DNA of 16,412 bases from Octopus sinensis (taxonomy: Eukaryota): the NCBI RefSeq assembly GCF_006345805.1, contig NW_021825205.1, forward strand, positions 1-16,412, given 5' to 3'. This document shows positions 86 to 15,017 of the stretch, piece by piece (positions within the stretch are counted from its first letter, which is position 1; every line of letters begins with the position of its first letter). The notes beneath the pieces were generated by a model. The model was not told the origin of the DNA. It worked only from the letters and a program-made list of their open reading frames with translations, and did not search any database. Position numbers and translations under genes: made by a program.

Positions 86-206
86 GTTGAGTATAGAAAA
101 TCGGGGTGAGTGACTACTTGATAATTATAAGCACCTGTGTATACCATTTGGTGGTGTAGGTGGTGGAGTAAATTGATCAAAATAAAAACATGATGCGAAG
201 GATTCA

Positions 207-284
207 GCGGCACATATGTTTCGGGCCTTTATTAGACAGATTTATAACAATGCATAATGTATGTCTGTGGCCTTCTTCAGCCGC
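207..284 (-). ncRNA. Mirror copy of the hammerhead motif with a GUG (non-cleavable) triplet
   Basis: Reverse complement of 438-515 except at position 211 (C on +, G on -), giving GAAAC-ATAT-GTG-CCGC. The NUH rule requires H not to be G. Confidence 0.75.
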
Positions 285-437
285 GCACAACAGCTTCCAC
301 AAGGACATGTGTTACATCAAAAATTCTTGGTTGGGGATGCAAATCCTCTCATTCGCGTACGACATAATGCGGCAGCAGCATAGAATTGAAGCGTCCATCT
401 CTTTCTTCAACACATGTCCTTGTGGAAGCTGTTGTGC

Positions 438-515
438 GCGGCTGAAGAAGGCCACAGACATACATTATGCATTGTTATAAATCTGTCTAATAAAGGCCCG
501 AAACATATGTACCGC
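438..515 (+). ncRNA. Minimal type I hammerhead ribozyme motif with extended helix II
   Basis: Helix I GCGG (438-441)/CCGC (512-515). Core CTGAAGA (442-448) plus A449. Helix II GGCC (450-453)/GGCC (495-498), extended by ACAGA (454-458)/TCTGT (482-486). C499, then GAAA (500-503). Helix III lies in the palindrome ACATATGT (503-510). Cleavage triplet GUA, N17=511. Confidence 0.8.
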
Positions 516-572
516 TGAATCCTTCGCATCATGTTTTTATTTTGATCAACATATATATATATATATTCTCTT

Positions 573-983: not shown

Positions 984-1027
984 GATAATGATGATGATGA
1001 TGATGATGATAATAAATAATAATATAA

Positions 1028-1101
<74 letters not shown>

Positions 1102-1124
1102 TAATAATAACAATAACAATAACA

Positions 1125-1193
<69 letters not shown>
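984..1193. repeat. (GAT)n/(TAA)n trinucleotide microsatellite
   Basis: Short GAT run followed by about 180 bp of TAA with a few CAA and TAG variants. Confidence 0.95.
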
Positions 1194-1487
1194 GAATGAT
1201 AAAAAAGGTAGTGAAACCTATTTGAAAATGATACCAGGCTTACCATCCCTACAGGAAGTGGGAAAAAATCGTGTTAACTGGTACGGCTCATGTACTGAGA
1301 ATAGCATTATCGCTGTGAAAACAACATCCATTCATGAATATATTTATTTATTAATTTTTTTTAAATACATATTTTACCTGTGAATTTGCGTGTGTAATCT
1401 GGGAATGCATACAATGACCTTCTCTGCCCTAGGTGTACGGAAAGCACTCGGTGAGAAACAGAAGAAAATTTGAAGAAAGAAGGAAAA
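1194..1487 (+). mobile_element. 5'-truncated R4/Dong-like non-LTR retrotransposon (ORF C-terminus plus 3' UTR) inserted in a (TAA)n array
   Basis: Reads MIKKGSETYLKMIPGLPSLQEV, +1 frameshift, KIVLTGTAHVLRIALSL* (stop 1316-1318). This matches the QK.VL.GTA..LR..L* terminus typical of R4-clade RLE elements. (TAA)n lies on both sides. Confidence 0.7.
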
Positions 1488-1964: not shown

Positions 1965-2222
1965 TACCGCCATTTTCGGTTGTGGATATCAGCTGCCCTC
2001 TGGACACCAATGTGGTTTTAAACAGATACAAGAGAAAAAGCATGTCTATAACCTCGTCTTTCGGTTCACTGATTTGTACAATTTCAAATCGATTTTCCCT
2101 TATCAATGACATGCACTGCGATACCAGTTGGTCGTGGTGTTATGTTTATCAACGACCCGGGCAACGCCGCACTACATTGTGTGTGTTGCGTACGTTCCGC
2201 TTAAACGCGAAAGTTGAGTAAA
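1965..2222 (+). mobile_element. Possible 3' fragment of an RLE-type (restriction-like endonuclease) non-LTR retrotransposon
   Basis: VVDISCPLDTNV, then in a shifted frame QEKKHVY...DLYNF, then IPV. This resembles the RLE pattern (V/I)(D/E)(V/I)..P.D.N......K...Y..L.....Y......P.V.G. Heavily frameshifted and abuts the (CATA)n array. Confidence 0.45.
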
Positions 2223-2224
2223 TA

Positions 2225-2399
2225 CTATATACATACATACATACATACATACATACATACATACATACATACAACATACATACATACATACATACATACA
2301 TACATGCATGCATACATACATACATACATACATACATAAATACATACATACATACATACATGCATGCATGCATACATATATACATACATACATACATAC

Positions 2400-2430
<31 letters not shown>

Positions 2431-2689
2431 CATACATACATACATACTATATACATACATACATGCATGCATGCATACATATATACATACATACACATAC
2501 ATACACACATACATACATACATACATACATACATACATACATACATACATGCATGCATACATACATGCATGCATGCATGCATACATACATACATACATGC
2601 ATACATACATACATACATGCATGCATGCATGCATATATACATACATACATACATACACACATACATACATACATACATACATACATACA

Positions 2690-2723
<34 letters not shown>

Positions 2724-3020
2724 CATACATACATGCATGCATGCATACATATATACATACATACATACATACAACATACATACATACATACATACATACA
2801 TACATACATACATACATACATGCATGCATACATACATGCATGCATGCATGCATACATACATACATACATGCATACATACATACATGCATGCATGCATGCA
2901 TATATACATACATACATACATACACACATACATACATACATACATACATACATACATACATACATACATACATGCATGCATGCATACATACATACATACA
3001 TACATACATACATACATACA

Positions 3021-3055
<35 letters not shown>
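2225..3055. repeat. About 830-bp (CATA)n tetranucleotide array with CATG, TATA and CACA variant units
   Basis: Direct reading. It is the source of all the MYVC and HTYI ORFs in the track. Confidence 0.97.
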
Positions 3056-3260
3056 GCAGTCTCCATGATAGATCATTAGCCACTACAGATATTTTTTCTC
3101 TCCTTGTTTCTCTCCTTGATTTTTCTGTGTCCCTTTCTGTCGAAGAGCGTAGGCTCGAAACGTAAAAGACTTTTTCTATTCCTGAGCGTTATACTAATAT
3201 ATCTGTTTATTTTGTACACCACCTGTCTTCGTCCTTTTTGTCTTTTTCGTAAACTCTCCC
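3056..3260 (+). mobile_element. About 205-bp hammerhead-bearing mini-element (solo pLTR or retrozyme-like monomer) between microsatellites
   Basis: Pyrimidine-rich leader, HHR motif at 3133-3168, TTCCTGAGCGT at 3179-3189 and a T-rich tail. Flanked by (CATA)n and (TA)n. Same layout as 9966-10177. Confidence 0.65.
3133..3168 (+). ncRNA. Minimal type I hammerhead motif with an A6>U core substitution
   Basis: CTTT-CTGTCGA-A-GAGC-gtag-GCTC-GAAAC-GTA-AAAG. Helix I CTTT/AAAG, helix II GAGC/GCTC, helix III reduced to the ACGT palindrome, triplet GUA. Confidence 0.7.
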
Positions 3261-3980: not shown

Positions 3981-6084
3981 TTATCCGTACGGTAGTTTTT
4001 CACTCAACATTTTATACTTCGTGACGTGTTTGCAGGGATTTAAAAGTTCCAATCTTTTGTTCAGAGCGTATTTAGCCTGGAACAGGATGAAAACATTTTT
4101 CAGTCAGGCACAAATCGCACCTCGTTGGGCCTTTATATGCTCCATGTTTGTATGGTGCTACTTTTTCCAAAATTGTCCGGCAGATTTCGAAAGGACGGGT
4201 ATCATTTACTTTCAATTGCCAGACATGTTTAGCTAGACTCGTTGCTGACCTATTCTCAGGGTAAAGAAATGAATTTCGATGGGAATATAATCTAGTGTTG
4301 AAGGAATTTTCTGAGGCTCCTGTACATGTCTTGTATTCTTGAGTCATCTATTTGCACCATAGTTCTGTATGCTATTCGTTTCTCAAAACAATTTCCTCCC
4401 AATGGACAGCAATTTTGTCTTTACAATTACAATTCTTGTTATTATTTCCAGCACTATGGTTACTCCTAACGGTTTTCGCGTTGTGCTGGTTAATTAAAGA
4501 GGCAAAACTCTTGCAGCAAGAGTTCTTGCAACAAAAGTTCTTCAGCCTTCTTCTATTAAAAATTCTTTGGAATGTATGCTTTGCTTGAAAGTGCTTAGAA
4601 ACTAGTTTTAAGAATTCCCTCCCTATATTGGTTTTTACTGCAATACTAAGAGTTGGATTAAACCACAAAACATTCCTAGTTCTACTTTCTACCTGCTCTA
4701 TTATTGTTAGCTGTACTTTGACAATTCTTGATCTTCTCTGAGAATCCATTGTGTCTTAATACATTATTATAATACGGCGCGGAATTTTGAAACGCTGTCT
4801 CGTCTGAAGATATGGAAGATATTCACCTTCCTATATTGCTAACTAGATTCTTAAATAGTATGGGTAGATGATTAGATCCTTTGTTACTATAATATAGCTT
4901 TACATTGAGCTTACGGTAGGATTTTAATTTAATTGCAAAACTAAGTTAATATCTAAAAAACTCTACACTATTTAGTTTCTGTCGTTATTCGTAAGGCCAT
5001 TCTTTGGAAGAAATTTATGAGATTCATCCTAAGTCTATCTAACTCATGACCATTCTTATTACGAGAGACTATTAGACTTTCATCCTTGAATAATCCAGCA
5101 TCTATAAAAGGGAATTCCAGATGCAGATTGTGTAGAATATAAACTCCTGTATACATAATTCAGCACATCGAATAAAAGGCCCTCGCTTTTTTAATCCAGG
5201 TAAAATCGTCGTAAAAGAAGATGGATTTCCTTGCTTGCAGTGTAATATCTATATCCAAATTGTCGACGGAGACATATTGTTGGTGAAGCTTGATGCTTTA
5301 AGGAGTAACGGCCTTGACATTGACGGGTAGAACTCCGTTAATATCGAACTCCGTGAATTTGCAGTTACACTTATGGCCAATTCTCTTGAGTCAATCTATA
5401 ACTGACTTACTATTGTTCCAAATCTGTAAATTTAATTCCATATTTAACTTGTTTAAAATATAATCTAAGATATTTTTGCTATTAATACCTATTTCTGTTT
5501 TAGCTGGGTTGATTAGCCTACATTTAGGATTTCAACTAAAATTAGCTTTGTGGTCCTTAAGAGTGATAAAGGTTGGCGTGGGGGAAGGTATCCTATCCTA
5601 TCACTAATTTTAAGATTGTTAGCGATCCTTCTTACTTCCATAGTCACCTCTATATATAAGTTAGCGTTAGCTTTTTTATAAGTGTCTGTGATATTATTAG
5701 AAAGAAGTCGTTTTTAAAATCTTTTTCAATGCTTAAAGATATTTTTTTACGAAATTTTTATCTGAATTCTTAATGTTTCTAAATTTTTCGTTCATAGTTC
5801 CTAGAGCGAATTGGTTATTTTATGGGATTTTATCCTTCTATTAAGTTCGAAAAGGTCTTTTTTAAAAGCTTCTAATTCTAAAATAGGTGGCGGTTTTTTT
5901 TAGAAGATTTAAGTCCATACTTTTTCATATTAACCTGCAGCTCTTTCATGTCAATGAAATAAGCCCGCCATCTTATTCTTCGGAAAAAATCTTCCGTTTT
6001 TCTAATCAGGTTTTTAATGTATTGCTTCTGCGTCAGGATCGGTATGTTTTTTTTTATAGAAAAATCCAGCAGGTAGATTTCCAT
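3981..6084 (-). pseudogene. Disrupted Penelope-like retroelement ORF: reverse transcriptase plus C-terminal GIY-YIG endonuclease
   Basis: Across several frames: FSIKKNIPI...RRIRWRAYF...YGLKS, NNITDTYKK, FITLKDHK...NPKCRLINPAK, FDI/EFYPS, RKSIFF...WIKK, GLFKDES (decayed YRDD), FLDINL, SNH, SAPYYN, RNVLWFNPT...TNIGREFLKLVSKHF, CNC..CPL..C, Y(I)G.....F.TR...H..SF, LAKHVW, CDLCLTEK, LNKRLELLNPCKH. Stop at 3981-3983. Many stops and frameshifts, and the MGS.DG part of RT motif B is deleted near 5165. The AT-rich 3383-3980 is the probable 3' UTR. Confidence 0.9.
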
Positions 6085-6119
6085 TTTTTCTGCTGTTTCT
6101 TCTTCTTACCTGTGGAGAG

Positions 6120-6266
6120 TCAGCAACTGAGTGTATTGGGCCCTATTCAAATTACCATTAATTTTAACCAATTTTCTTGAACCATCACTTTTTATGTATC
6201 CCCAAAGCATTGGACTCTTACGCCTAAACTTTACTGCTTTCGTCGTGTACCGCAGGTCGTTTCGCT
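6120..6266 (-). mobile_element. Inverted Tc1 transposase fragment (left arm of a foldback)
   Basis: Reads KRNDLRYTTKAVKFRRKSPMLWGYIKSDGSRKLVKINGNLNRAQYTQLL. Homologous to the + strand copy starting at 6280. Confidence 0.8.
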
Positions 6267-6387
6267 TTCTCATAAGCGAAGCGAAACGACCCACGTTACA
6301 CGACAGTGAAGTTTGGGGGTAAGAGTCTGATGCTTTGGGGATTCATAAAACGTGATGGCTCAAGAAAATTGGTTAAAATTGACAATA

Positions 6388-7225
6388 GGCGGAGGAGTGG
6401 CTATGTGGTAAGTAGCTTGCTTACCAACCACATGGTTCCGGATTCAGTCCCACTGCGTGGCACCTTGGGCAAGTGTCTTCTACTATAGCCTCGGGCCGAC
6501 CAATGCCTTGTGAGTGGATTTGGTAGACGGAAACTGAAAGAAGCCAGTCGTATATATGTATATATATGTATGTGTGTATATATGTATGTATATATATATA
6601 TGTAGTGGTGGCGCAATGGCCCAGTGGTTAGGGCAGCGGACTCGCGGTCATAGGATCGCGGTTTCGATTCCCAGACCGGGCGTTGTGAGTGTTTATTGAG
6701 CGAAAACACCTAAAGCTCCACGAGGCTTCGGCAGGGGATGGTAATGATCCCTGCTGTACCCTTTCACCACAACTTTCTCTCACTCTTACTTCCTGTTTCT
6801 GTTGTACCTGTATTTCAAAGGGCCGGCCTTGTCACTATCTGTGTCACGCTGAATATCCCCGAGAACTACGTTAAGGGTACACGTGTCTGTGGAGTGCTCA
6901 GCCACTTACACGTTAATTTCACGAGCAGGCTGTTCCGTTGATTCGTATCAACCGGAACCCTCGTCGTCGTAACCGACGGAGTGCTTCCAATATATATGTA
7001 TGTGTGTATATGTTTGTGTGTGTGTGTTTGTCCCCCTAGAATTACTTGACAACCGATGCTGGTGTGTTTACGTTCCCGTAACTTAGTGGTTCGGCAAAAG
7101 AGACCGATAGAATAAGTACTAGGCTTACAAAGAATAAGTCCTGGGATCGATTTGCTCGACTAAAGGCGGTGCTCCAGCATAGCAGCAGTCACATGACTGA
7201 AACAACTAAAAGAGTAAAAGAGAGT
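6388..7225 (+). mobile_element. tRNA-derived SINE with an internal microsatellite, split by a second SINE, with AATA target duplication
   Basis: Box A-like TGGCTATGTGG and box B-like GGATTCAGTCCC. CORE-like CCTTGGGCAAGTGTCTT. 5' half 6388-6550, 3' half about 7025-7225. AATA at 6384-6387 and 7226-7229, and removing the insert restores the Tc1 frame IDNNLN. A diverged copy lies at about 15110-15385. Confidence 0.85.
6605..6990 (+). mobile_element. Second tRNA-derived SINE (tRNA-Arg-like head, reminiscent of octopus OR-type SINEs) nested in the first SINE's internal (TA/TG)n
   Basis: Box A TGGCCCAGTGGTT and box B GGTTTCGATTCCC in a tRNA-like head, followed by about 300 bp of non-tRNA body. TATATATGTA-type repeats on both sides. 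Confidence 0.8.
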
Positions 7226-7858
7226 AATAACTTGAATAGTGCCAAACACATCCAGTTGCTGAAGGACAATTTGATACCAGACTTGGATGAAGGTGAGATC
7301 TTTCAGCATGACGGATTTCCATGCCACAGATCTCATGCAACACAAGTATCATCGAGCAAATGCGGACAGAAATAAAGGGAAGAATTCATCAGAAGAATCC
7401 ACGCAATCTTGAAGAGTTGTGGGAGCTCAGCCACTGAGAATGGCATCTTATACCTGTCAAGATAGTGAAGGATTTGTGCGCATCAATTCCTAGGCGCATT
7501 GAAGCAGTTATTCAAGCTAAGGTAAGCCACACGAAAGATTAACAATGTACAGTAACTTCTTGAAATGAACTTTATGTAATAAATTTTCATTATAGACATT
7601 TTTTTTTGTTTTAAAATACTGTATCTTAGCCGGTTTTATATGAGGTGGCCGATAACTTTGGCCATTTTTGGTGGTCGTCTCGCAACTTCCCCTCTCATTG
7701 AGAACTCCTACGACAAAATAGAATGATTAGCTTTGGAAATGGCTCCAACAGGGCCAACGTTTCATCTGTAAAAATTGCAATGCGAAACATCCACTTATAA
7801 GTTGGCCATTCGTTGAAATGAACAACAGTTTAAATTAACCGAAGGCTTTTCCACGGTA

Positions 7859-8408: not shown

Positions 8409-8496
8409 CAGAATTCCGAAGACACGAAAGCAGTTTTGTCCTGCCTTGCTAAATTATTTCCTAAATCCTTGATATACAAAATGATGGAATTCTCAG
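8409..8496 (+). CDS. Candidate internal coding exon of an unidentified host gene (QNSEDTKAVLSCLAKLFPKSLIYKMMEFS-G)
   Basis: Strong acceptor (CCCTTTTTTTTTCAG, NAGNAG CAGCAG) and perfect donor CAG|GTGAGT. One open frame (phase 0 to phase 1), with stops in the other two. Product not recognised. Confidence 0.5.
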
Positions 8497-8608
8497 GTGA
8501 GTTCGGCTAAATAACGGAAAACCGGAAGATAAATATCAAACAAGTACTCATTTTTAAGTTGGTCAAAGTCATTATTTTTAAGTTGAGGTTGATGAGGTTA
8601 CTCTAGGT

Positions 8609-9316: not shown

Positions 9317-9695
9317 CGGGTTGTCCGGAAAGTTTGTGCCGATTTATAGTAGCTTACCTTTCGACTTATTTTAGAACATGGTTGAGTCCATAAAATAGGA
9401 TTTTACTACACCTCCATTTAGAGCACAATTTAAGCTATCTTTTTCTGGAAGAAGGTTTATGTTCCTATAACCTGTGTTAATTCTGTAACCCTTTAAAATG
9501 GAAGATAATAAAGTTCATTTTCGCCACTTGATGCTTCAGGAAGCAGACAAAAATTGCTACAGCTCGGCTGTGATGTGTTCCCCCCCCCCTCCATATTCAC
9601 CAGATATTGCTCCTTTGGATTTCTACTTATTCAGGTCTCTGCAGAATAGTCTTAATGGTAAAAATTTCAATTCCTTATACGACATCACACCATAC
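9317..9695 (+). mobile_element. Internally deleted, 3'-truncated mariner remnant
   Basis: TA followed by TIR-like CGGGTTGTCCGGAAAGTTTGTGCCGATTT. Start MEDNKVHFRHLML is fused to QKLLQLGCDV and PPYSPDIAPLDFYLFRSLQNSLNGKNFNSL (YSPDLAP motif). Confidence 0.88.
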
Positions 9696-9699
9696 TAAT

Positions 9700-9937
9700 C
9701 ATATCTGTCAGGCATATGGAAGGGAGTGTAATTCGGCAGGAGGACTTAAACGACATGCAAAGGTACATGAAGCCTAGTTACAACTACAACCGGCTACTGC
9801 CGGTAAAGGTTTTAGCTGCCAATTCTGTACCAGACATTGTAGATCTTTGGCTGGGCTAAAAAGTCACATTAGATCACAGCACCAATAACAGTTAAGCTAC
9901 GTGCAATGGGCATACTCGATAACGAGGGGGGCAACCA
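9700..9937 (+). mobile_element. 3' end of a LINE (RTE-like) with two decayed C2H2 fingers and a short 3' UTR
   Basis: HICQAYGRECNSAGGLKRHAKVHEA*...FSCQFCTRHCRSLAGLKSHIRSQHQ* (stop 9886-9888). This matches the C..C.R.C.S..GL.SH.R pattern of RTE-type ORF ends. About 50-nt UTR, then (TA)n. Confidence 0.55.
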
Positions 9938-9965
9938 TTATATATATATATATATGAATATATAT

Positions 9966-10177
9966 AAATGTGACCGCGTGTGTACCGTTGGCGATTTTTT
10001 CCTACGTCTTCCCTTCTCTGGATCTTTCCTTCTCCTATGTTTCCGACGAAGAGCTCCGCTCGAAACGTTAAACCCCCCTTCTTCCTTTCCTTCCTGAGCG
10101 TCAAATAATACTATATTTGTTCCACGTCCTCACGTTGTTGTGCTTTCTTTTTGTGTTTTCATGTTTGGATTAACTTT
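9966..10177 (+). mobile_element. About 210-bp hammerhead-bearing mini-element between (TA)n runs
   Basis: Pyrimidine-rich leader, HHR motif at 10039-10073, TTCCTGAGCGT at 10091-10101 and a T-rich tail. Same layout as 3056-3260. Confidence 0.65.
10039..10073 (+). ncRNA. Minimal type I hammerhead motif with a U4>C core substitution
   Basis: GTTT-CCGACGA-A-GAGC-tcc-GCTC-GAAAC-GTT-AAAC. Helix I GTTT/AAAC, helix II GAGC/GCTC, ACGT palindrome, triplet GUU. Confidence 0.72.
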
Positions 10178-10229
10178 ATATATATATGTATATCTGTGTA
10201 TGTATGTATGTATGTATGTATGTATATAT

Positions 10230-11174
10230 GATCCGGTTCTTGACTGAAGATTGAAGGCTTCGAATGTCCCGTCCGTGTTTCTTGTATCGTCTTCTAAATG
10301 TTTTACGTTCTTGTCTCAGTTTGTATTTTTCTACATAAAATAATATATATAGCGACGTCCGTACCCTCGTTGGCCTTATGTAAGTACATATTCCTGTAAA
10401 TTTGGTACGACTCTACACACTATCTCTCTCTCCTACATTTCTCTGCCTTTCACACTTTGCACTCTACTTTGATCTGTCCCCTTCTCTCTCTCTCTCTACT
10501 TCTCCTCCTTTTCTCTTTTCTTGCCTCTGATTCTTTGGTCTACTCTTCCCCCCAATCTCTCACAATTCTCTGTCTTTCTCACCTTGCACTCACTAGCCCT
10601 TCTTGGCACGCACTCTTTCTTCTCCCCTCTTTAATTCCTTCTTTCTCTCTCTTCTCCCCCCCCCTTTGTTGCCTTCGTCCCTCTTTCTCTCTCTCTTTGT
10701 TTTTTGCCCCCTTTCTTTTCTCTCTCATCTGTCACGTGACCGCTGGTCAAAATCAGCCTTTTGGCCTCCGACCACTGCCGTGAAAAGATCTGTTGTCTTC
10801 GTCTGCCGATAAAGGCATTTTTTCAAAATACGCCAGCTAAACTTGTTGAACTGTTTATTAGTCGTAAGACACCCGCTGTTTTTTGTCCTGTTTTTACCAT
10901 TATTGTTTTTGTATTTTATATTCGTGTGGCATCGTCCGTTTTTCTGTCCCTGTTTCGTATACATTCGATCCTTCTTCCAAGAAATCTGATGCTCGTAGCT
11001 TAGGTTTTCCTTGGGGCTGGCCGGATCGGAGCGATCTCAAGATTAATCAGCCGAAATTGCGAGGATGATCCGGTTCTTGACTGAAGATTGAAGGCTTCGA
11101 ATGTCCCGTCCGTGTTTTTTGTATCGTCTTCTAAATGTTTTACGTTCTTGTCCCAGTTTGTATTTTTCTACATA
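10230..11174 (+). mobile_element. Non-coding element copy A: 837-bp unit preceded by a 108-bp copy of its own 3' end
   Basis: 10230-10337 and 11067-11174 are direct repeats matching at 106/108 positions. CT-rich body, flanked by (TATG)n and (TA)n. Strand is arbitrary. Confidence 0.8.
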
Positions 11175-11189
11175 TAATGTATATATGTA

Positions 11190-11228
<39 letters not shown>

Positions 11229-11245
11229 ATTATATATATATATAT

Positions 11246-11785
11246 AAGGTATGTAGAAAAATACAACATGGACAAGAACGTATAACTCTTAGAAGACGAT
11301 ACAATAAACACGGACAGGACATTCGAAACCCTCAGTCTTCAGTCAAGAACCGGATCATCGTAGTAATTTCGGCTGATTAATCTTGAGATTACTAGATCAC
11401 GGCCAGCCCTCCAAGAAAAACTAAGCAACGAGCATTAGAAAAACTAAGCTGGGAGCGTAGATTTCCTGGAAGAAGGATCGAATGCATACGGACACCAGGA
11501 CAGCACAAGGGACGAATATAAAAAAAAAAATAAAAAAATAAAATAATGGAATACAGAAACATGAACTACAGAAGCATTAACGGTGAAAACAACAACAAGT
11601 GTCTTACGACTGATAACAAGCAAACAAATTTTTTCTCTGGCGCAAGGAAAGGAGCCTTATCGGCGATGCCTATAGCGGCGGACGAAACACAACGATGTTA
11701 ACACGACGCTGGTCAGAAGCTGAAAGGCAGATTTCGGCCAGCAGTCACGTGACAGAGAAGAGAGAAAAGAAAAGAAAGAGAAGCA

Positions 11786-11824
<39 letters not shown>

Positions 11825-12136
11825 GGACAAACGCGACAAAGAGCGAGAAGAGAGAGAAAGAAGGAATCAGAGAGGAGAAGGGATGGGTGTCGAAGAGCGA
11901 CCTGTGAGTGCAGAGCGAGACAAAGAAATAGGAGGGTAGTGGAAGATTAGACCAAAGAATCAGAGGAAAGAGAAGAGAAAAAGAGGATGAGTAGGAGAGA
12001 AGGGGACAGATCAAGTAAAAGTGAGAGAGAGAGAAGAAAGACAACAAGAGTCGTACCAGTTATTAAGAATATGTGCTCACATTAATGTTAAGAGGGTACG
12101 TGGCGCCTGGAATATATGTTAAGGTATGTAGAAAAA
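11246..12136 (-). mobile_element. Non-coding element copy B (diverged, inverted relative to A): 875-bp unit with a 16-bp terminal direct repeat
   Basis: Collinear reverse-complement similarity to copy A throughout (GATCCGGTTCTTGACTGAAGA, GATTAATCAGCCGAAAT, GTCACGTGAC, CTGATTCTTTGGTCTA, GATCTGTCCCCTTCTCTC, GGTACGACTCT, CGTACCCTC). AAGGTATGTAGAAAAA occurs at 11246-11261 and 12121-12136. Confidence 0.8.
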
Positions 12137-12779
12137 ATGTATGTATGTATGTATATATATATGTATATATGTATATATATATAATATATATATATAATAA
12201 TCTATATATATATTTATGTATATAATGTATGTATGTATGTATGTATGTATGTACGTATGTATTATGTATGTACACTATATTTCGAAGGAGATGCAAACTA
12301 GCAAATGGAGCATACATACTCGCACATATATAGATACATACATACACCATACATATAAATGAGTATGTGTGTGTGTGAGTGTCTGTCTGTCAATGTATGC
12401 AATTGTGAGAGCGTTTATTTGAAAGTTTCTATGCCTGAGTGACTGAGTGCGTACCTCCTCTCCCCCCTTCCACCCCACCACACCACCCTTCTATGTTCTC
12501 TACGTTACTACAAATTATTTAGGTTATGCCTACCTACATATCGATCTCTCAACGCCTGCTTTACAACAATCCTACAACAGAAGCACGCTTGTTCCTCGCT
12601 GAAGTAAAAACACACTCAATAACACTTTACCTCACTCTCAAAATATTCCCCCCACCCTCTTCTCCTTTTCTTCTTCTATCACTCTCTCTCTCTCCATTTC
12701 GCTCTCTCTCTCTCTCTCTCCCTATCTTGCTTTCATTCTGTCTTTCTCTCCACAGTGTCTTTCACACGCTTTAACTCAC

Positions 12780-13520
12780 AACCGTCCACACATACTCGCG
12801 CGCACACACACACACAACACACAACATACACACATATACACATCACCTTCTCTCTCACTCCCCCCCTCTTTATGTGTCATCTTTCTATGTTTCGCTCGGC
12901 TTCAACTTAATTTCTTTTTTTTACACTCTCTTTGTTTCTCTCTTTCTCCCTCTCGTTCTCTCTCACTCTCTCTTTCTTTTTTCTTTCTCTCTCTGTATTT
13001 ATAGATACACACACTATAGATATACATATATACATATATATATACATATATATATAATTATATATATATTTATAAGTATATACATAAACATATATATAAA
13101 TGTACATATATATATATGTATATATATATGTCTGTATACATATACAATTATTTATACATATATGTACATATATATGTAAATATATATATTACATACATAT
13201 CTACATATATATGTGCGTATACATATATATATATAGACATATGCATTTATATATATAGATATATATACATATATATATCATATATATACATACATATATA
13301 TGCATATATATACATATATCATATATATATACATACATATATATACATATATATATATATATTCATATATATATACATATATATATATATTCATATATAT
13401 ACATATATATATACATATATATATGTATATATATATATATATATGCATACATACATATATATATATATATACATACACGCACACACACATATATGTATTT
13501 ATATACACGCACACACATCT
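12780..13520. repeat. Compound low-complexity block: (CA)n, (CT)n and about 500 bp of degenerate (TA)n
   Basis: Direct reading. Source of the IY-rich ORFs. Confidence 0.92.
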
Positions 13521-13825
13521 CTCCCCTCTCTCCCCTCTCTCTTACCCTGAATTTTGTCCATGCTTATCCATGCCACTCTCTCTTGCTGGTCCACGAACTC
13601 CATATTTTGTTGTTTCCCCCCCTACTCCCGCCCCTCTCCCTCTTACTCTCAATCTCTCTGAGAAATCGTTTATTTGTGGATGCGATGTGTGCGTGTGAAC
13701 GCGCCAGTGTGTATGTGTGTGTGTGCGCGCGCGGGCGTTTGTGTGTACATGTGAGCATAATGAAGCCAGTTTATTCATTTCCCTAACTGCCTACCCTGTA
13801 TATCTGACTCATCAATCGGGTGTCA

Positions 13826-14510
<685 letters not shown>

Positions 14511-14980: not shown

Positions 14981-15017
14981 CTTTATATTTCGGGTAGAAA
15001 GACCCCTCTTCAGATCG
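14981..15017 (-). ncRNA. Decayed hammerhead-like core
   Basis: Minus strand CTGAAGA-G-GGGT-ctttct-ACCC-GAAAT-ATA. Core and helix II are intact and there is an ATAT palindrome, but helix I has only 1 bp. Confidence 0.4.

What the first reader, a model, noticed from the sequence alone, without database searches (positions are those of the whole stretch)
10230..12136. 840-875 nt non-coding element with a 'partial 3' end plus full unit' structure and a junction shared by two diverged copies
Seen: copy A is a 108-bp terminal fragment followed by an 837-bp unit. Copy B is a 16-bp terminal fragment followed by an 875-bp unit. In both, the end (...TTTTCTACATA) runs into the start through a similar junction (A: CTACATAAAATAATATATATAGCGACGTCCGTACCCTC; B: CTACATACCTTAACATATATTCCAGGCGCCACGTACCCTC). 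Both sit in TA-rich microsatellites, and I see no ORF, TIR, tRNA head or poly(A). Established: partial-tandem insertions with variable 5' truncation typify PLEs and retrozymes. Inference: this is a non-autonomous retroelement copied from a circular or multimeric RNA for slightly more than one turn, possibly an undescribed family.
Basis: partly seen in the sequence, partly recalled or inferred. Interest (0 to 1): 0.75.

Follow-up and report, generated by a model that had tools for sequence, protein, structure and literature searches.

The report
Non-coding Penelope-like retroelement, two copies
Two old, diverged copies of an 840-875 bp non-coding mobile element sit tail-to-tail in one TA-rich microsatellite, each preceded by a short re-copy of its own 3' end; this matches the known insertion signature of Penelope-like retrotransposons, so it is probably an unclassified member of a known kind and not a new mechanism.

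Summary
Copy A (+ strand) has a 108-nt fragment (10230-10337) that is 106/108 identical to A's own 3' end (11067-11174), with a period of 837 nt. Copy B (- strand) has the 17-mer TTTTTCTACATACCTTA at both ends, with a period of 875 nt. A and B are 86% identical in aligned columns with many indels, and the last ~180 nt are the best conserved part. All outer flanks are (TA)n or (TGTA)n repeats.

There are no terminal inverted repeats, no tRNA head, no poly(A) and no ORF with homologues. No hammerhead or other ribozyme was found. Neither the unit nor its 3' domain folds better than shuffled sequence.

A fixed 3' end, a variable upstream partial copy, (TA)n targets and no hammerhead together match what is published for Naiad-type Penelope-like elements and their non-autonomous derivatives. 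I read this as a non-autonomous, pseudo-LTR-forming retroelement, with confidence 0.5.

The circular-RNA idea has no support from the sequence but is not excluded. Membership could not be proven. No further copies and no autonomous partner could be reached in any accessible database, so everything rests on two copies. The "shared junction" is weak: the spacer is 58% identical and TA-rich.

The parts
10179..10230 (.). Left flanking microsatellite, (TA)n then (TGTA)8.5
   Evidence: TRF; sequence
10230..10337 (+). Copy A upstream partial copy (pseudo-LTR). It repeats the last 108 nt of the element. With 2 nt of microhomology and 4 nt of tail the repeat spans 10228-10341.
   Evidence: 106/108 identical to 11067-11174; 114 nt at 97%
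10338..10351 (+). Copy A TA-rich spacer (AAATAATATATATA) between the partial copy and the unit. It resembles A's own 3' flank, TAATGTATATAT.
10352..11174 (+). Copy A body, from GCGACGTCCGTACCCTC to TTTTTCTACATA. The repeat period is 837 nt.
   Evidence: Alignment with copy B
10420..10730 (+). Pyrimidine-rich low-complexity core of copy A (C 40%, T 46%). It carries short (TC)n runs and its length varies between A and B.
10726..10745 (+). Conserved palindromic block CTGTCACGTGAC (contains CACGTG), present in both copies
10998..11174 (+). Best-conserved 3' domain of copy A (86-88% identical to B). It includes the 25-nt block ATCTCAAGATTAATCAGCCGAAATT and the 108-nt segment that is re-copied upstream.
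11175..11244 (.). (AT)n / (GTATATAT)n microsatellite between the two 3' ends, which face each other tail-to-tail
   Evidence: TRF row 11172-11246
11245..11261 (-). Copy B 3' terminus, TTTTTCTACATACCTTA on the minus strand
   Evidence: 17/17 identical to 12120-12136
11245..12106 (-). Copy B body on the minus strand, from GCGCCACGTACCCTC at 12106 to CTACATACCTTA at 11245. The period is 875 nt. It includes a 23-nt internal duplication at 11414-11456.
12107..12119 (-). Copy B spacer (ACATATATTCCAG on the minus strand)
12120..12136 (-). Copy B upstream partial copy, 17 nt, including the B-specific CCTTA
12137..12272 (.). Right flanking microsatellite, (ATGT)33 with (TA)n
   Evidence: TRF

Best explanation
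This is a small (about 0.84-0.88 kb) non-coding, non-autonomous retrotransposon. Its sense strand is the pyrimidine-rich one, and its 3' end is ...GTATTTTTCTACATA plus a short TA-rich tail.

**Shown**
- There are two independent, diverged insertions in opposite orientation inside one (TA)n/(TGTA)n microsatellite.
- Each consists of a complete unit preceded, after a 14-18 nt TA-rich spacer, by a 5'-truncated second copy of its own 3' end (108 nt in A, 17 nt in B). This is a pseudo-LTR.

**Inferred mechanism**
- A reverse transcriptase/endonuclease supplied in trans nicks TA-type repeats.
- The TA-rich RNA tail pairs with the nicked target and primes reverse transcription from the conserved 3' domain.
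- After reaching the 5' end, synthesis continues onto a second template. That template could be another RNA copy, a read-through dimer or, less likely, a circle. Synthesis stops at a variable point, giving the partial tandem.

**Most likely partner.** A Penelope-like element of the hammerhead-less, (TA)n-targeting Naiad type. That would make this an animal counterpart of the non-autonomous Chlamys elements such as MRC1.
For: - The polar architecture is measured directly: A 106/108 and B 17/17, with periods of 837 and 875 nt.
- Each partial copy carries its own copy's variants. B's includes the B-specific CCTTA. A's differs from B's 3' end at about 12 sites but from A's 3' end at only 2.
- The conservation gradient peaks in the last ~180 nt, as expected if the 3' end is what the enzyme recognises.
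- All four outer flanks are TA/TGTA repeats. Such repeats cover 16% of the window outside the element, so two independent hits by chance would be about 0.025.
- There are no TIRs, no tRNA head, no ORF with homologues and no ribozyme.
- Published features match. PLEs are 5'-truncated and form partial tandems (pLTRs). Naiads prefer (TA)n and lack canonical hammerheads. Non-autonomous Chlamys elements form pLTRs and share only their 3' ends with autonomous families (PMC8557442; PMC8969392).
Against: - There are only two copies, so 'fixed 3' end, variable 5' start' rests on n=2.
- No autonomous element shares the 3' end, and the window contains no Penelope-type RT or endonuclease (Pfam gave no hit on 10 selected fragments).
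- Target-site duplications and any 30-40 bp PLE 'tail' cannot be read because the flanks are simple repeats.
- The partial and full copies could be two successive insertions of one subfamily into the same repeat. This locus already shows that repeated hits happen.
- The (TA)n flanks could partly have grown from the element's own tail and not be a pre-existing target.
- LINEs with (TA)n tails also seem to be present nearby (9700-9966).
Confidence: 0.5

Rival explanations
1. A LINE-dependent, SINE-like element with a (TA)n tail. An RTE/CR1/L2-type LINE that uses TA-rich tails mobilises it. The partial tandem arises either from two successive insertions (a severely 5'-truncated copy, then a full copy landing in that copy's TA tail) or from template jumping by the LINE reverse transcriptase.
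For: - The spacers between partial and full copies are TA-rich and poorly conserved (about 58% identical), as microsatellite tails would be.
- This locus already shows two independent insertions into one repeat.
- A LINE-like ORF end followed by (TA)n lies 300 bp upstream, at 9700-9966.
- In penaeid shrimp both RTE-BovB and Penelope are reported to carry long (AT)n (PMC7878876). The host of this window is not established.
Against: - Both copies show the same arrangement in the same relative orientation, and each partial matches its own full copy. That would need four coordinated events.
- The 3' UTR of the nearby LINE-like fragment has no similarity to the element.
- There is no pol III head.
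- Partial tandems are a hallmark of PLEs and are not typical of LINEs.
Confidence: 0.2
2. A retrozyme-like element copied from a circular RNA by rolling-circle reverse transcription for slightly more than one turn.
For: - The slightly-more-than-one-unit structure with a head-to-tail junction is what a circular template would give.
- Animal retrozymes are proposed to be non-autonomous PLE derivatives (bioRxiv 10.64898/2026.07.22.740005).
Against: - No hammerhead, HDV-like, twister or other ribozyme was found at E<=10.
- The element has no CUGANGA...GAAA core.
- The unit is not compactly folded: MFE -122.9 against a shuffled mean of -134.6, z = +2.0. The 3' domains give z = +1.7 and +0.5.
- The junction is the least conserved part of the 5' region.
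- By my recollection (not checked against a paper here), the unit is 2-5 times longer than described animal retrozymes.
Confidence: 0.07
3. DNA-level origin without reverse transcription. One route is unequal exchange or slippage between the flanking TA repeats, producing tandem duplicates that were later eroded. Another is reintegration of rolling-circle-amplified extrachromosomal circles. A third is a Helitron-like rolling-circle transposon read on the opposite strand, with a fixed start and a variable overrun past one turn.
For: - The element is bracketed by near-identical simple repeats that favour unequal exchange.
- On the minus strand the structure reads as 'full unit plus a variable re-copy of the start'.
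Against: - Two independent copies would have to end at the same base and differ only on one side.
- The 5' starts, GATCCGG and TTTTTCTAC, are not in TA-rich sequence.
- There are no Helitron termini (5' TC, 3' CTRR with hairpin, A/T insertion site) and no inverted repeats.
- Conservation is concentrated at one end.
Confidence: 0.1
4. A miniature LTR retrotransposon (TRIM-like) with 108-114 bp LTRs. In this reading copy B has lost most of its 5' LTR.
For: - Copy A alone looks like LTR-body-LTR, with 97-98% identical terminal repeats.
- A short purine run, GCGAGGATGA, precedes the 3' repeat.
Against: - The repeats run GATCC...ACATA, not TG...CA.
- The 5' repeat is followed by a TA-rich spacer, not a tRNA primer-binding site.
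- B's 17-nt repeat ends at exactly the same 3' base as A's and abuts the flanking microsatellite, so B's difference lies entirely at the 5' start.
- MRC1 in Chlamydomonas was misread as a non-autonomous LTR element for the same reason.
Confidence: 0.05

Closest known systems
Naiad-clade Penelope-like elements (Craig et al. 2021, PMC8557442)
   Same: Frequent 5' truncation; partial tandems that form pseudo-LTRs; preferred insertion into (TA)n microsatellites; no canonical hammerhead ribozyme. They are abundant in marine invertebrates, including decapods.
   Different: Naiads are 3.4-4.4 kb and encode an N-terminal GIY-YIG endonuclease plus a reverse transcriptase. This element is 0.84-0.88 kb and non-coding. 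No sequence link to any Naiad could be tested.
Non-autonomous Chlamys elements such as MRC1 of Chlamydomonas reinhardtii
   Same: Short non-coding derivatives that still form pLTRs and head-to-tail insertions. They resemble their autonomous partner only at the 3' end, and were once misclassified as LTR elements.
   Different: They come from green algae and target (CA)n/(C)n. Here the host is an animal and the target is (TA)n/(TGTA)n, and the partner is unknown.
Metazoan non-LTR retrozymes
   Same: Non-coding, head-to-tail repeated, and thought to be non-autonomous PLE derivatives.
   Different: Retrozymes are defined by a type I hammerhead in every unit and produce circular RNA. Here no ribozyme was found and there is no compact fold. 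By my recollection the unit here is also several-fold longer.
LINE-dependent SINEs with simple-repeat tails, and microsatellite-targeting LINEs of the R1 clade (the latter recalled from general knowledge)
   Same: 3'-end-first insertion, a simple-repeat tail that matches the target, and 5' truncation.
   Different: There is no pol III head, and the upstream partial self-copy is not a usual LINE/SINE feature.
TRIM / LTR-retrozyme type miniature LTR elements
   Same: Copy A alone shows ~110-bp direct terminal repeats around a non-coding body.
   Different: The two copies have unequal repeats (108 and 17 nt). There are no TG...CA ends and no PBS next to the 5' repeat.

Membership tests
Penelope-like elements (non-autonomous derivative) | A full unit preceded by a 5'-truncated tandem copy (pseudo-LTR) | tested here: met
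   A: 108 nt, 106/108 identical. B: 17/17 identical. Both are followed by a full unit.
Penelope-like elements (non-autonomous derivative) | Invariant 3' end with variable 5' truncation across copies | tested here: inconclusive
   The two copies agree with it, having the same 3' end and 5' starts at -108 and -17. But n=2, and no more copies could be found.
Penelope-like elements (non-autonomous derivative) | 3'-end similarity to an autonomous element encoding a PLE-type RT and a GIY-YIG endonuclease | not testable with these tools
   The window's open frames show no PLE RT or endonuclease (Pfam gave no hit on 10 selected fragments). No eukaryotic genome database was available.
Penelope-like elements (canonical Penelope/Neptune/Nematis clades) | Hammerhead ribozyme inside the pLTR | tested here: not met
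   Rfam scans at E<=10 found none. The core pattern is absent from the element. Naiad and Chlamys PLEs also lack it.
Naiad-type PLEs | Insertion bias for (TA)n microsatellites | tested here: met
   Both copies are flanked on both sides by TA/TGTA repeats. Such repeats cover 16% of the window. This is weak statistically because n=2.
Naiad-type PLEs | [quoted passage not shown] | tested here: inconclusive
   Only a 5-13 nt copy-specific TA-rich tail can be recognised. Anything beyond merges with the flanking repeat.
Non-LTR retrozymes | A type I hammerhead ribozyme in each repeat unit | tested here: not met
Non-LTR retrozymes | Circular RNA with a compact, highly paired fold | tested here: not met
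   The fold is no better than shuffled sequence (z = +2.0 for the unit; +1.7 and +0.5 for the 3' domains). Circularity itself cannot be tested here.
LTR retrotransposons / TRIMs | Equal-length LTRs with TG...CA termini | tested here: not met
   Repeats of 108-114 nt and 17 nt; the ends read GATCC...ACATA.
LTR retrotransposons / TRIMs | A primer-binding site after the 5' LTR and a 4-6 bp target duplication | tested here: inconclusive
   The 5' repeat is followed by AAATAATATATATA, not a TGG... PBS. The target duplication is unreadable in simple-repeat flanks.
SINEs | A pol III-derived head (tRNA, 5S or 7SL) | tested here: not met
   ARAGORN found none. There was no tRNA, 5S or 7SL match in Rfam.
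Helitrons | 5' TC and 3' CTRR termini with a subterminal hairpin, inserted between A and T | tested here: not met
   The ends on either strand do not fit, and the element has no inverted repeats or hairpins apart from the CACGTG palindrome.

The most novel reading that the evidence does not exclude
A ribozyme-free non-coding element that nevertheless replicates through a circular or multimeric RNA and is reverse-transcribed for more than one turn at TA microsatellites. This would be a hammerhead-less counterpart of animal retrozymes, and a family that helps seed TA-type repeats in an SSR-rich genome.
Probability: 0.08. Interest if true: 0.6.

Novelty: new member of a known kind. Interest (0 to 1): 0.3.

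Why it matters
- **Annotation.** If the reading is right, this is an unclassified non-autonomous Penelope-like family in an animal genome where about 22% of this window is simple repeats. Such elements are routinely mis-annotated as LTR, LINE or 'unknown'.
- **Link to repeat growth.** They target TA repeats and carry TA-rich tails, so they bear on how transposons and microsatellites expand together. That link has already been proposed for penaeid shrimp (PMC7878876).
- **Scope of the gain.** It would also show that hammerhead-less PLE lineages have small parasitic derivatives in animals, as Chlamys does in algae. This improves annotation and natural history but does not reveal a new mechanism.

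Tried and rejected
**Searches for more copies (all failed)**
- Exact 21-25-mers from the two most conserved blocks gave 0 hits in viral contigs and 0 hits in prokaryotic genome contigs.
- The same approach gave one hit in metagenome contigs. It was only a 25-37 nt chance match (L001).
- Two protein-database searches used frames that stay open across the element, hoping to catch spurious ORF calls from the same species. Neither found anything.
- An exact look-up of a window ORF found no record.
- The best relative of a decayed transposon protein in the window is only 53% identical and lies on 1.3-kb contigs. The source species therefore seems to be absent from the accessible collections.
- Supplementary consensus sequences of the Naiad paper are not held.

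**Ideas rejected**
- Ribozyme or retrozyme.
- Conserved RNA structure.
- tRNA head.
- TIRs or MITE.
- Relatedness of the 200-bp block at 9967-10180 to the element: its alignment score is no better than shuffled sequence.
- A hammerhead-core-like string at 14988-15013: no Rfam support, and 0.68 such matches are expected by chance per window.

Full report
**Context.** The window is eukaryotic, almost certainly animal, and is dense in repeats and transposon remnants.
- Simple repeats with periods up to 8 cover 22% of it, and TA/TGTA-type repeats cover 15-16%.
- It holds decayed Tc1/mariner transposase fragments and a LINE-like ORF end followed by (TA)n.
- The repeat load resembles that reported for penaeid shrimp (PMC7878876). 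I could not establish the host, so I treat this only as a lead.

**The observation.**
- On the + strand, 10230-10337 repeats 11067-11174 with 106/108 identity. With 2 nt of upstream microhomology and 4 nt of tail, the repeat is 10228-10341 against 11065-11178, 114 nt at 97%, with a period of 837.
- On the - strand, the 17-mer TTTTTCTACATACCTTA occurs at 12136..12120 and 11261..11245, with a period of 875.
- Reverse-complemented B aligns with A end to end: 657 matches, 110 mismatches and 179 gap columns. That is 85.7% identity in aligned positions, K2P 0.16.
- The last ~180 nt are 86-88% identical, against 51-75% elsewhere.
- A and B face each other tail-to-tail across (AT)38. The outer flanks are (TGTA)8.5 and (ATGT)33.
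- No other copy or fragment is present in the window. The neighbouring 200-bp block at 9967-10180 is unrelated.

- B's fragment is 17 nt, not 16.
- The end-to-start 'junction' is only about 58% identical and TA-rich. The two copies share an arrangement (3' end, a 14-18 nt TA-rich spacer, then the 5' end GCGaC.../GCGcC...) more than a conserved junction sequence.
- In each copy the spacer starts with the same copy-specific bases that follow the downstream 3' end: A has TAAT-R-TATATAT and B has CCTTA then ATATAT. The functional 3' end therefore includes a short TA-rich tail.

**What it is not.**

| Candidate | Result |
|---|---|
| Terminal inverted repeats | None. The only palindrome is the conserved CTGTCACGTGAC block. 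|
| tRNA-like head | None. |
| Terminal poly(A) | None. |
| Protein coding | ORFs reach 108 aa only in the 311-nt core, which is 86% pyrimidine, so stops are rare. They have no homologues in a 5.8-billion-protein database. |
| Self-cleaving ribozyme | Rfam with permissive thresholds found no hammerhead, HDV-like, twister or other ribozyme in 10150-12200. The hammerhead core pattern does not occur in the element. |
| Structured RNA | The 3' domains fold differently in A and B and no better than shuffles (z = +1.7 and +0.5). The whole unit gives z = +2.0. |
| LTR element | Unequal repeats, GATCC...ACATA ends, and a TA-rich spacer where a primer-binding site should be. |
| Helitron | The termini do not fit on either strand. 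|

**What it most likely is.**
- One end is invariant and best conserved. The other carries a re-copy of that end of variable length.
- Each re-copy matches its own copy's variants. A's partial differs from A's end at 2 sites but from B's end at about 12, and B's partial includes the B-specific CCTTA.
- This polarity is the expected outcome of 3'-end-first, target-primed reverse transcription that continues onto a second template.
- The published description of Penelope-like elements fits point by point:
  - They show frequent 5' truncation.
  - A full copy is preceded by a truncated copy, forming a pseudo-LTR.
  - In the Naiad clade, (TA)n is the preferred target and canonical hammerheads are absent.
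  - Non-autonomous Chlamys elements such as MRC1 form pLTRs and share only 3' ends with their autonomous partners, and were once mistaken for LTR elements (PMC8557442; PMC8969392).
- Naiads are abundant in decapods and bivalves.
- I therefore read A and B as two independent insertions of a non-autonomous, pLTR-forming retroelement into one TA/TGTA microsatellite.
- Independence is supported by 16% divergence between A and B against about 2% within A's repeat pair.

**Shown and inferred.**
- Shown: the architecture, the polarity, the conservation gradient, the repeat context, and the absence of coding, ribozyme and TIR features.
- Inferred: the RNA intermediate, priming on TA repeats, the second-template step, and the identity of the enzyme.

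**Limits.**
- Everything rests on two copies. I could not reach the source genome.
- Exact-word scans of viral, metagenome and prokaryotic collections gave only one chance match.
- The protein routes found nothing.
- The best relative of a transposon protein in the window is only 53% identical, so the species seems absent from the accessible data.
- Target duplications are unreadable in simple-repeat flanks.
- Two alternatives remain live. The partial and full copies may be two successive hits of one subfamily into the same repeat. A LINE with TA tails may be the partner.
- The circular-RNA version is neither supported nor excluded. It predicts copies with two or more units and RNase R-resistant RNA.

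**Verdict.**
- The retrozyme/circular-template refinement lacks support.
- It is most probably an unclassified member of a known kind, and of modest interest.

Noticed in passing
window 173-549: Near-perfect foldback: 141-nt arms (173-313 and 409-549) that are 99% complementary, with a 95-nt loop. (TA)n follows directly on the right (552-566), and a long (TA)n lies at 1-85 on the left. It looks like a young inverted or head-to-head insertion, or a foldback element, in a TA repeat.
   Followed up: partly
window 4075-4755 (- strand): Two adjacent frames of a decayed ~220-aa protein with a WFNP motif, a CxC...C cluster and a GIY-YIG-like Y..T...F..R..H stretch. Its homologues are 208-374 aa proteins without any Pfam domain; the best is 53% identical, on 1.3-kb Logan contigs. 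It is probably an uncharacterised transposon protein. No adjacent RT was seen, so I do not read it as a PLE.
   Followed up: partly
window 6109-7372 and 9489-9695: Tc1/mariner transposase remnants. Two overlapping fragments lie on opposite strands at 6109-6485. Others are at 7082-7372 and 9489-9695. These are recognised by eye from motifs; Pfam gave no hit on the short pieces.
   Followed up: no
window 9700-9966: An ORF end with two C2H2-like zinc fingers, a stop at 9886-9888, a ~45-nt untranslated stretch and then (TA)14. It looks like the 3' end of a LINE-like element with a TA tail, so TA-tailed retroelements other than the one studied seem to be present.
   Followed up: no
window 990-1200, 2150-3070, 13000-13500, 13780-14450: Very long simple-repeat arrays: (AAT)n, about 0.9 kb of (TACA/TGCA)n, a TA-rich complex array, and about 0.7 kb of (TCTA)n. 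Simple repeats make up 22% of the window. They produce many false microRNA-family matches in Rfam.
   Followed up: partly
window 14988-15013 (- strand): CTGAAGAGGGGTCTTTCTACCCGAAA fits the hammerhead core pattern with a possible stem II. However, no Rfam hammerhead model matches the region, and 0.68 such matches are expected by chance per window.
   Followed up: yes
window 8410-8497 (+ strand): An 88-nt open stretch bounded by ttttttcag and gtgagt. It looks like an internal exon of a host or transposon gene.
   Followed up: no
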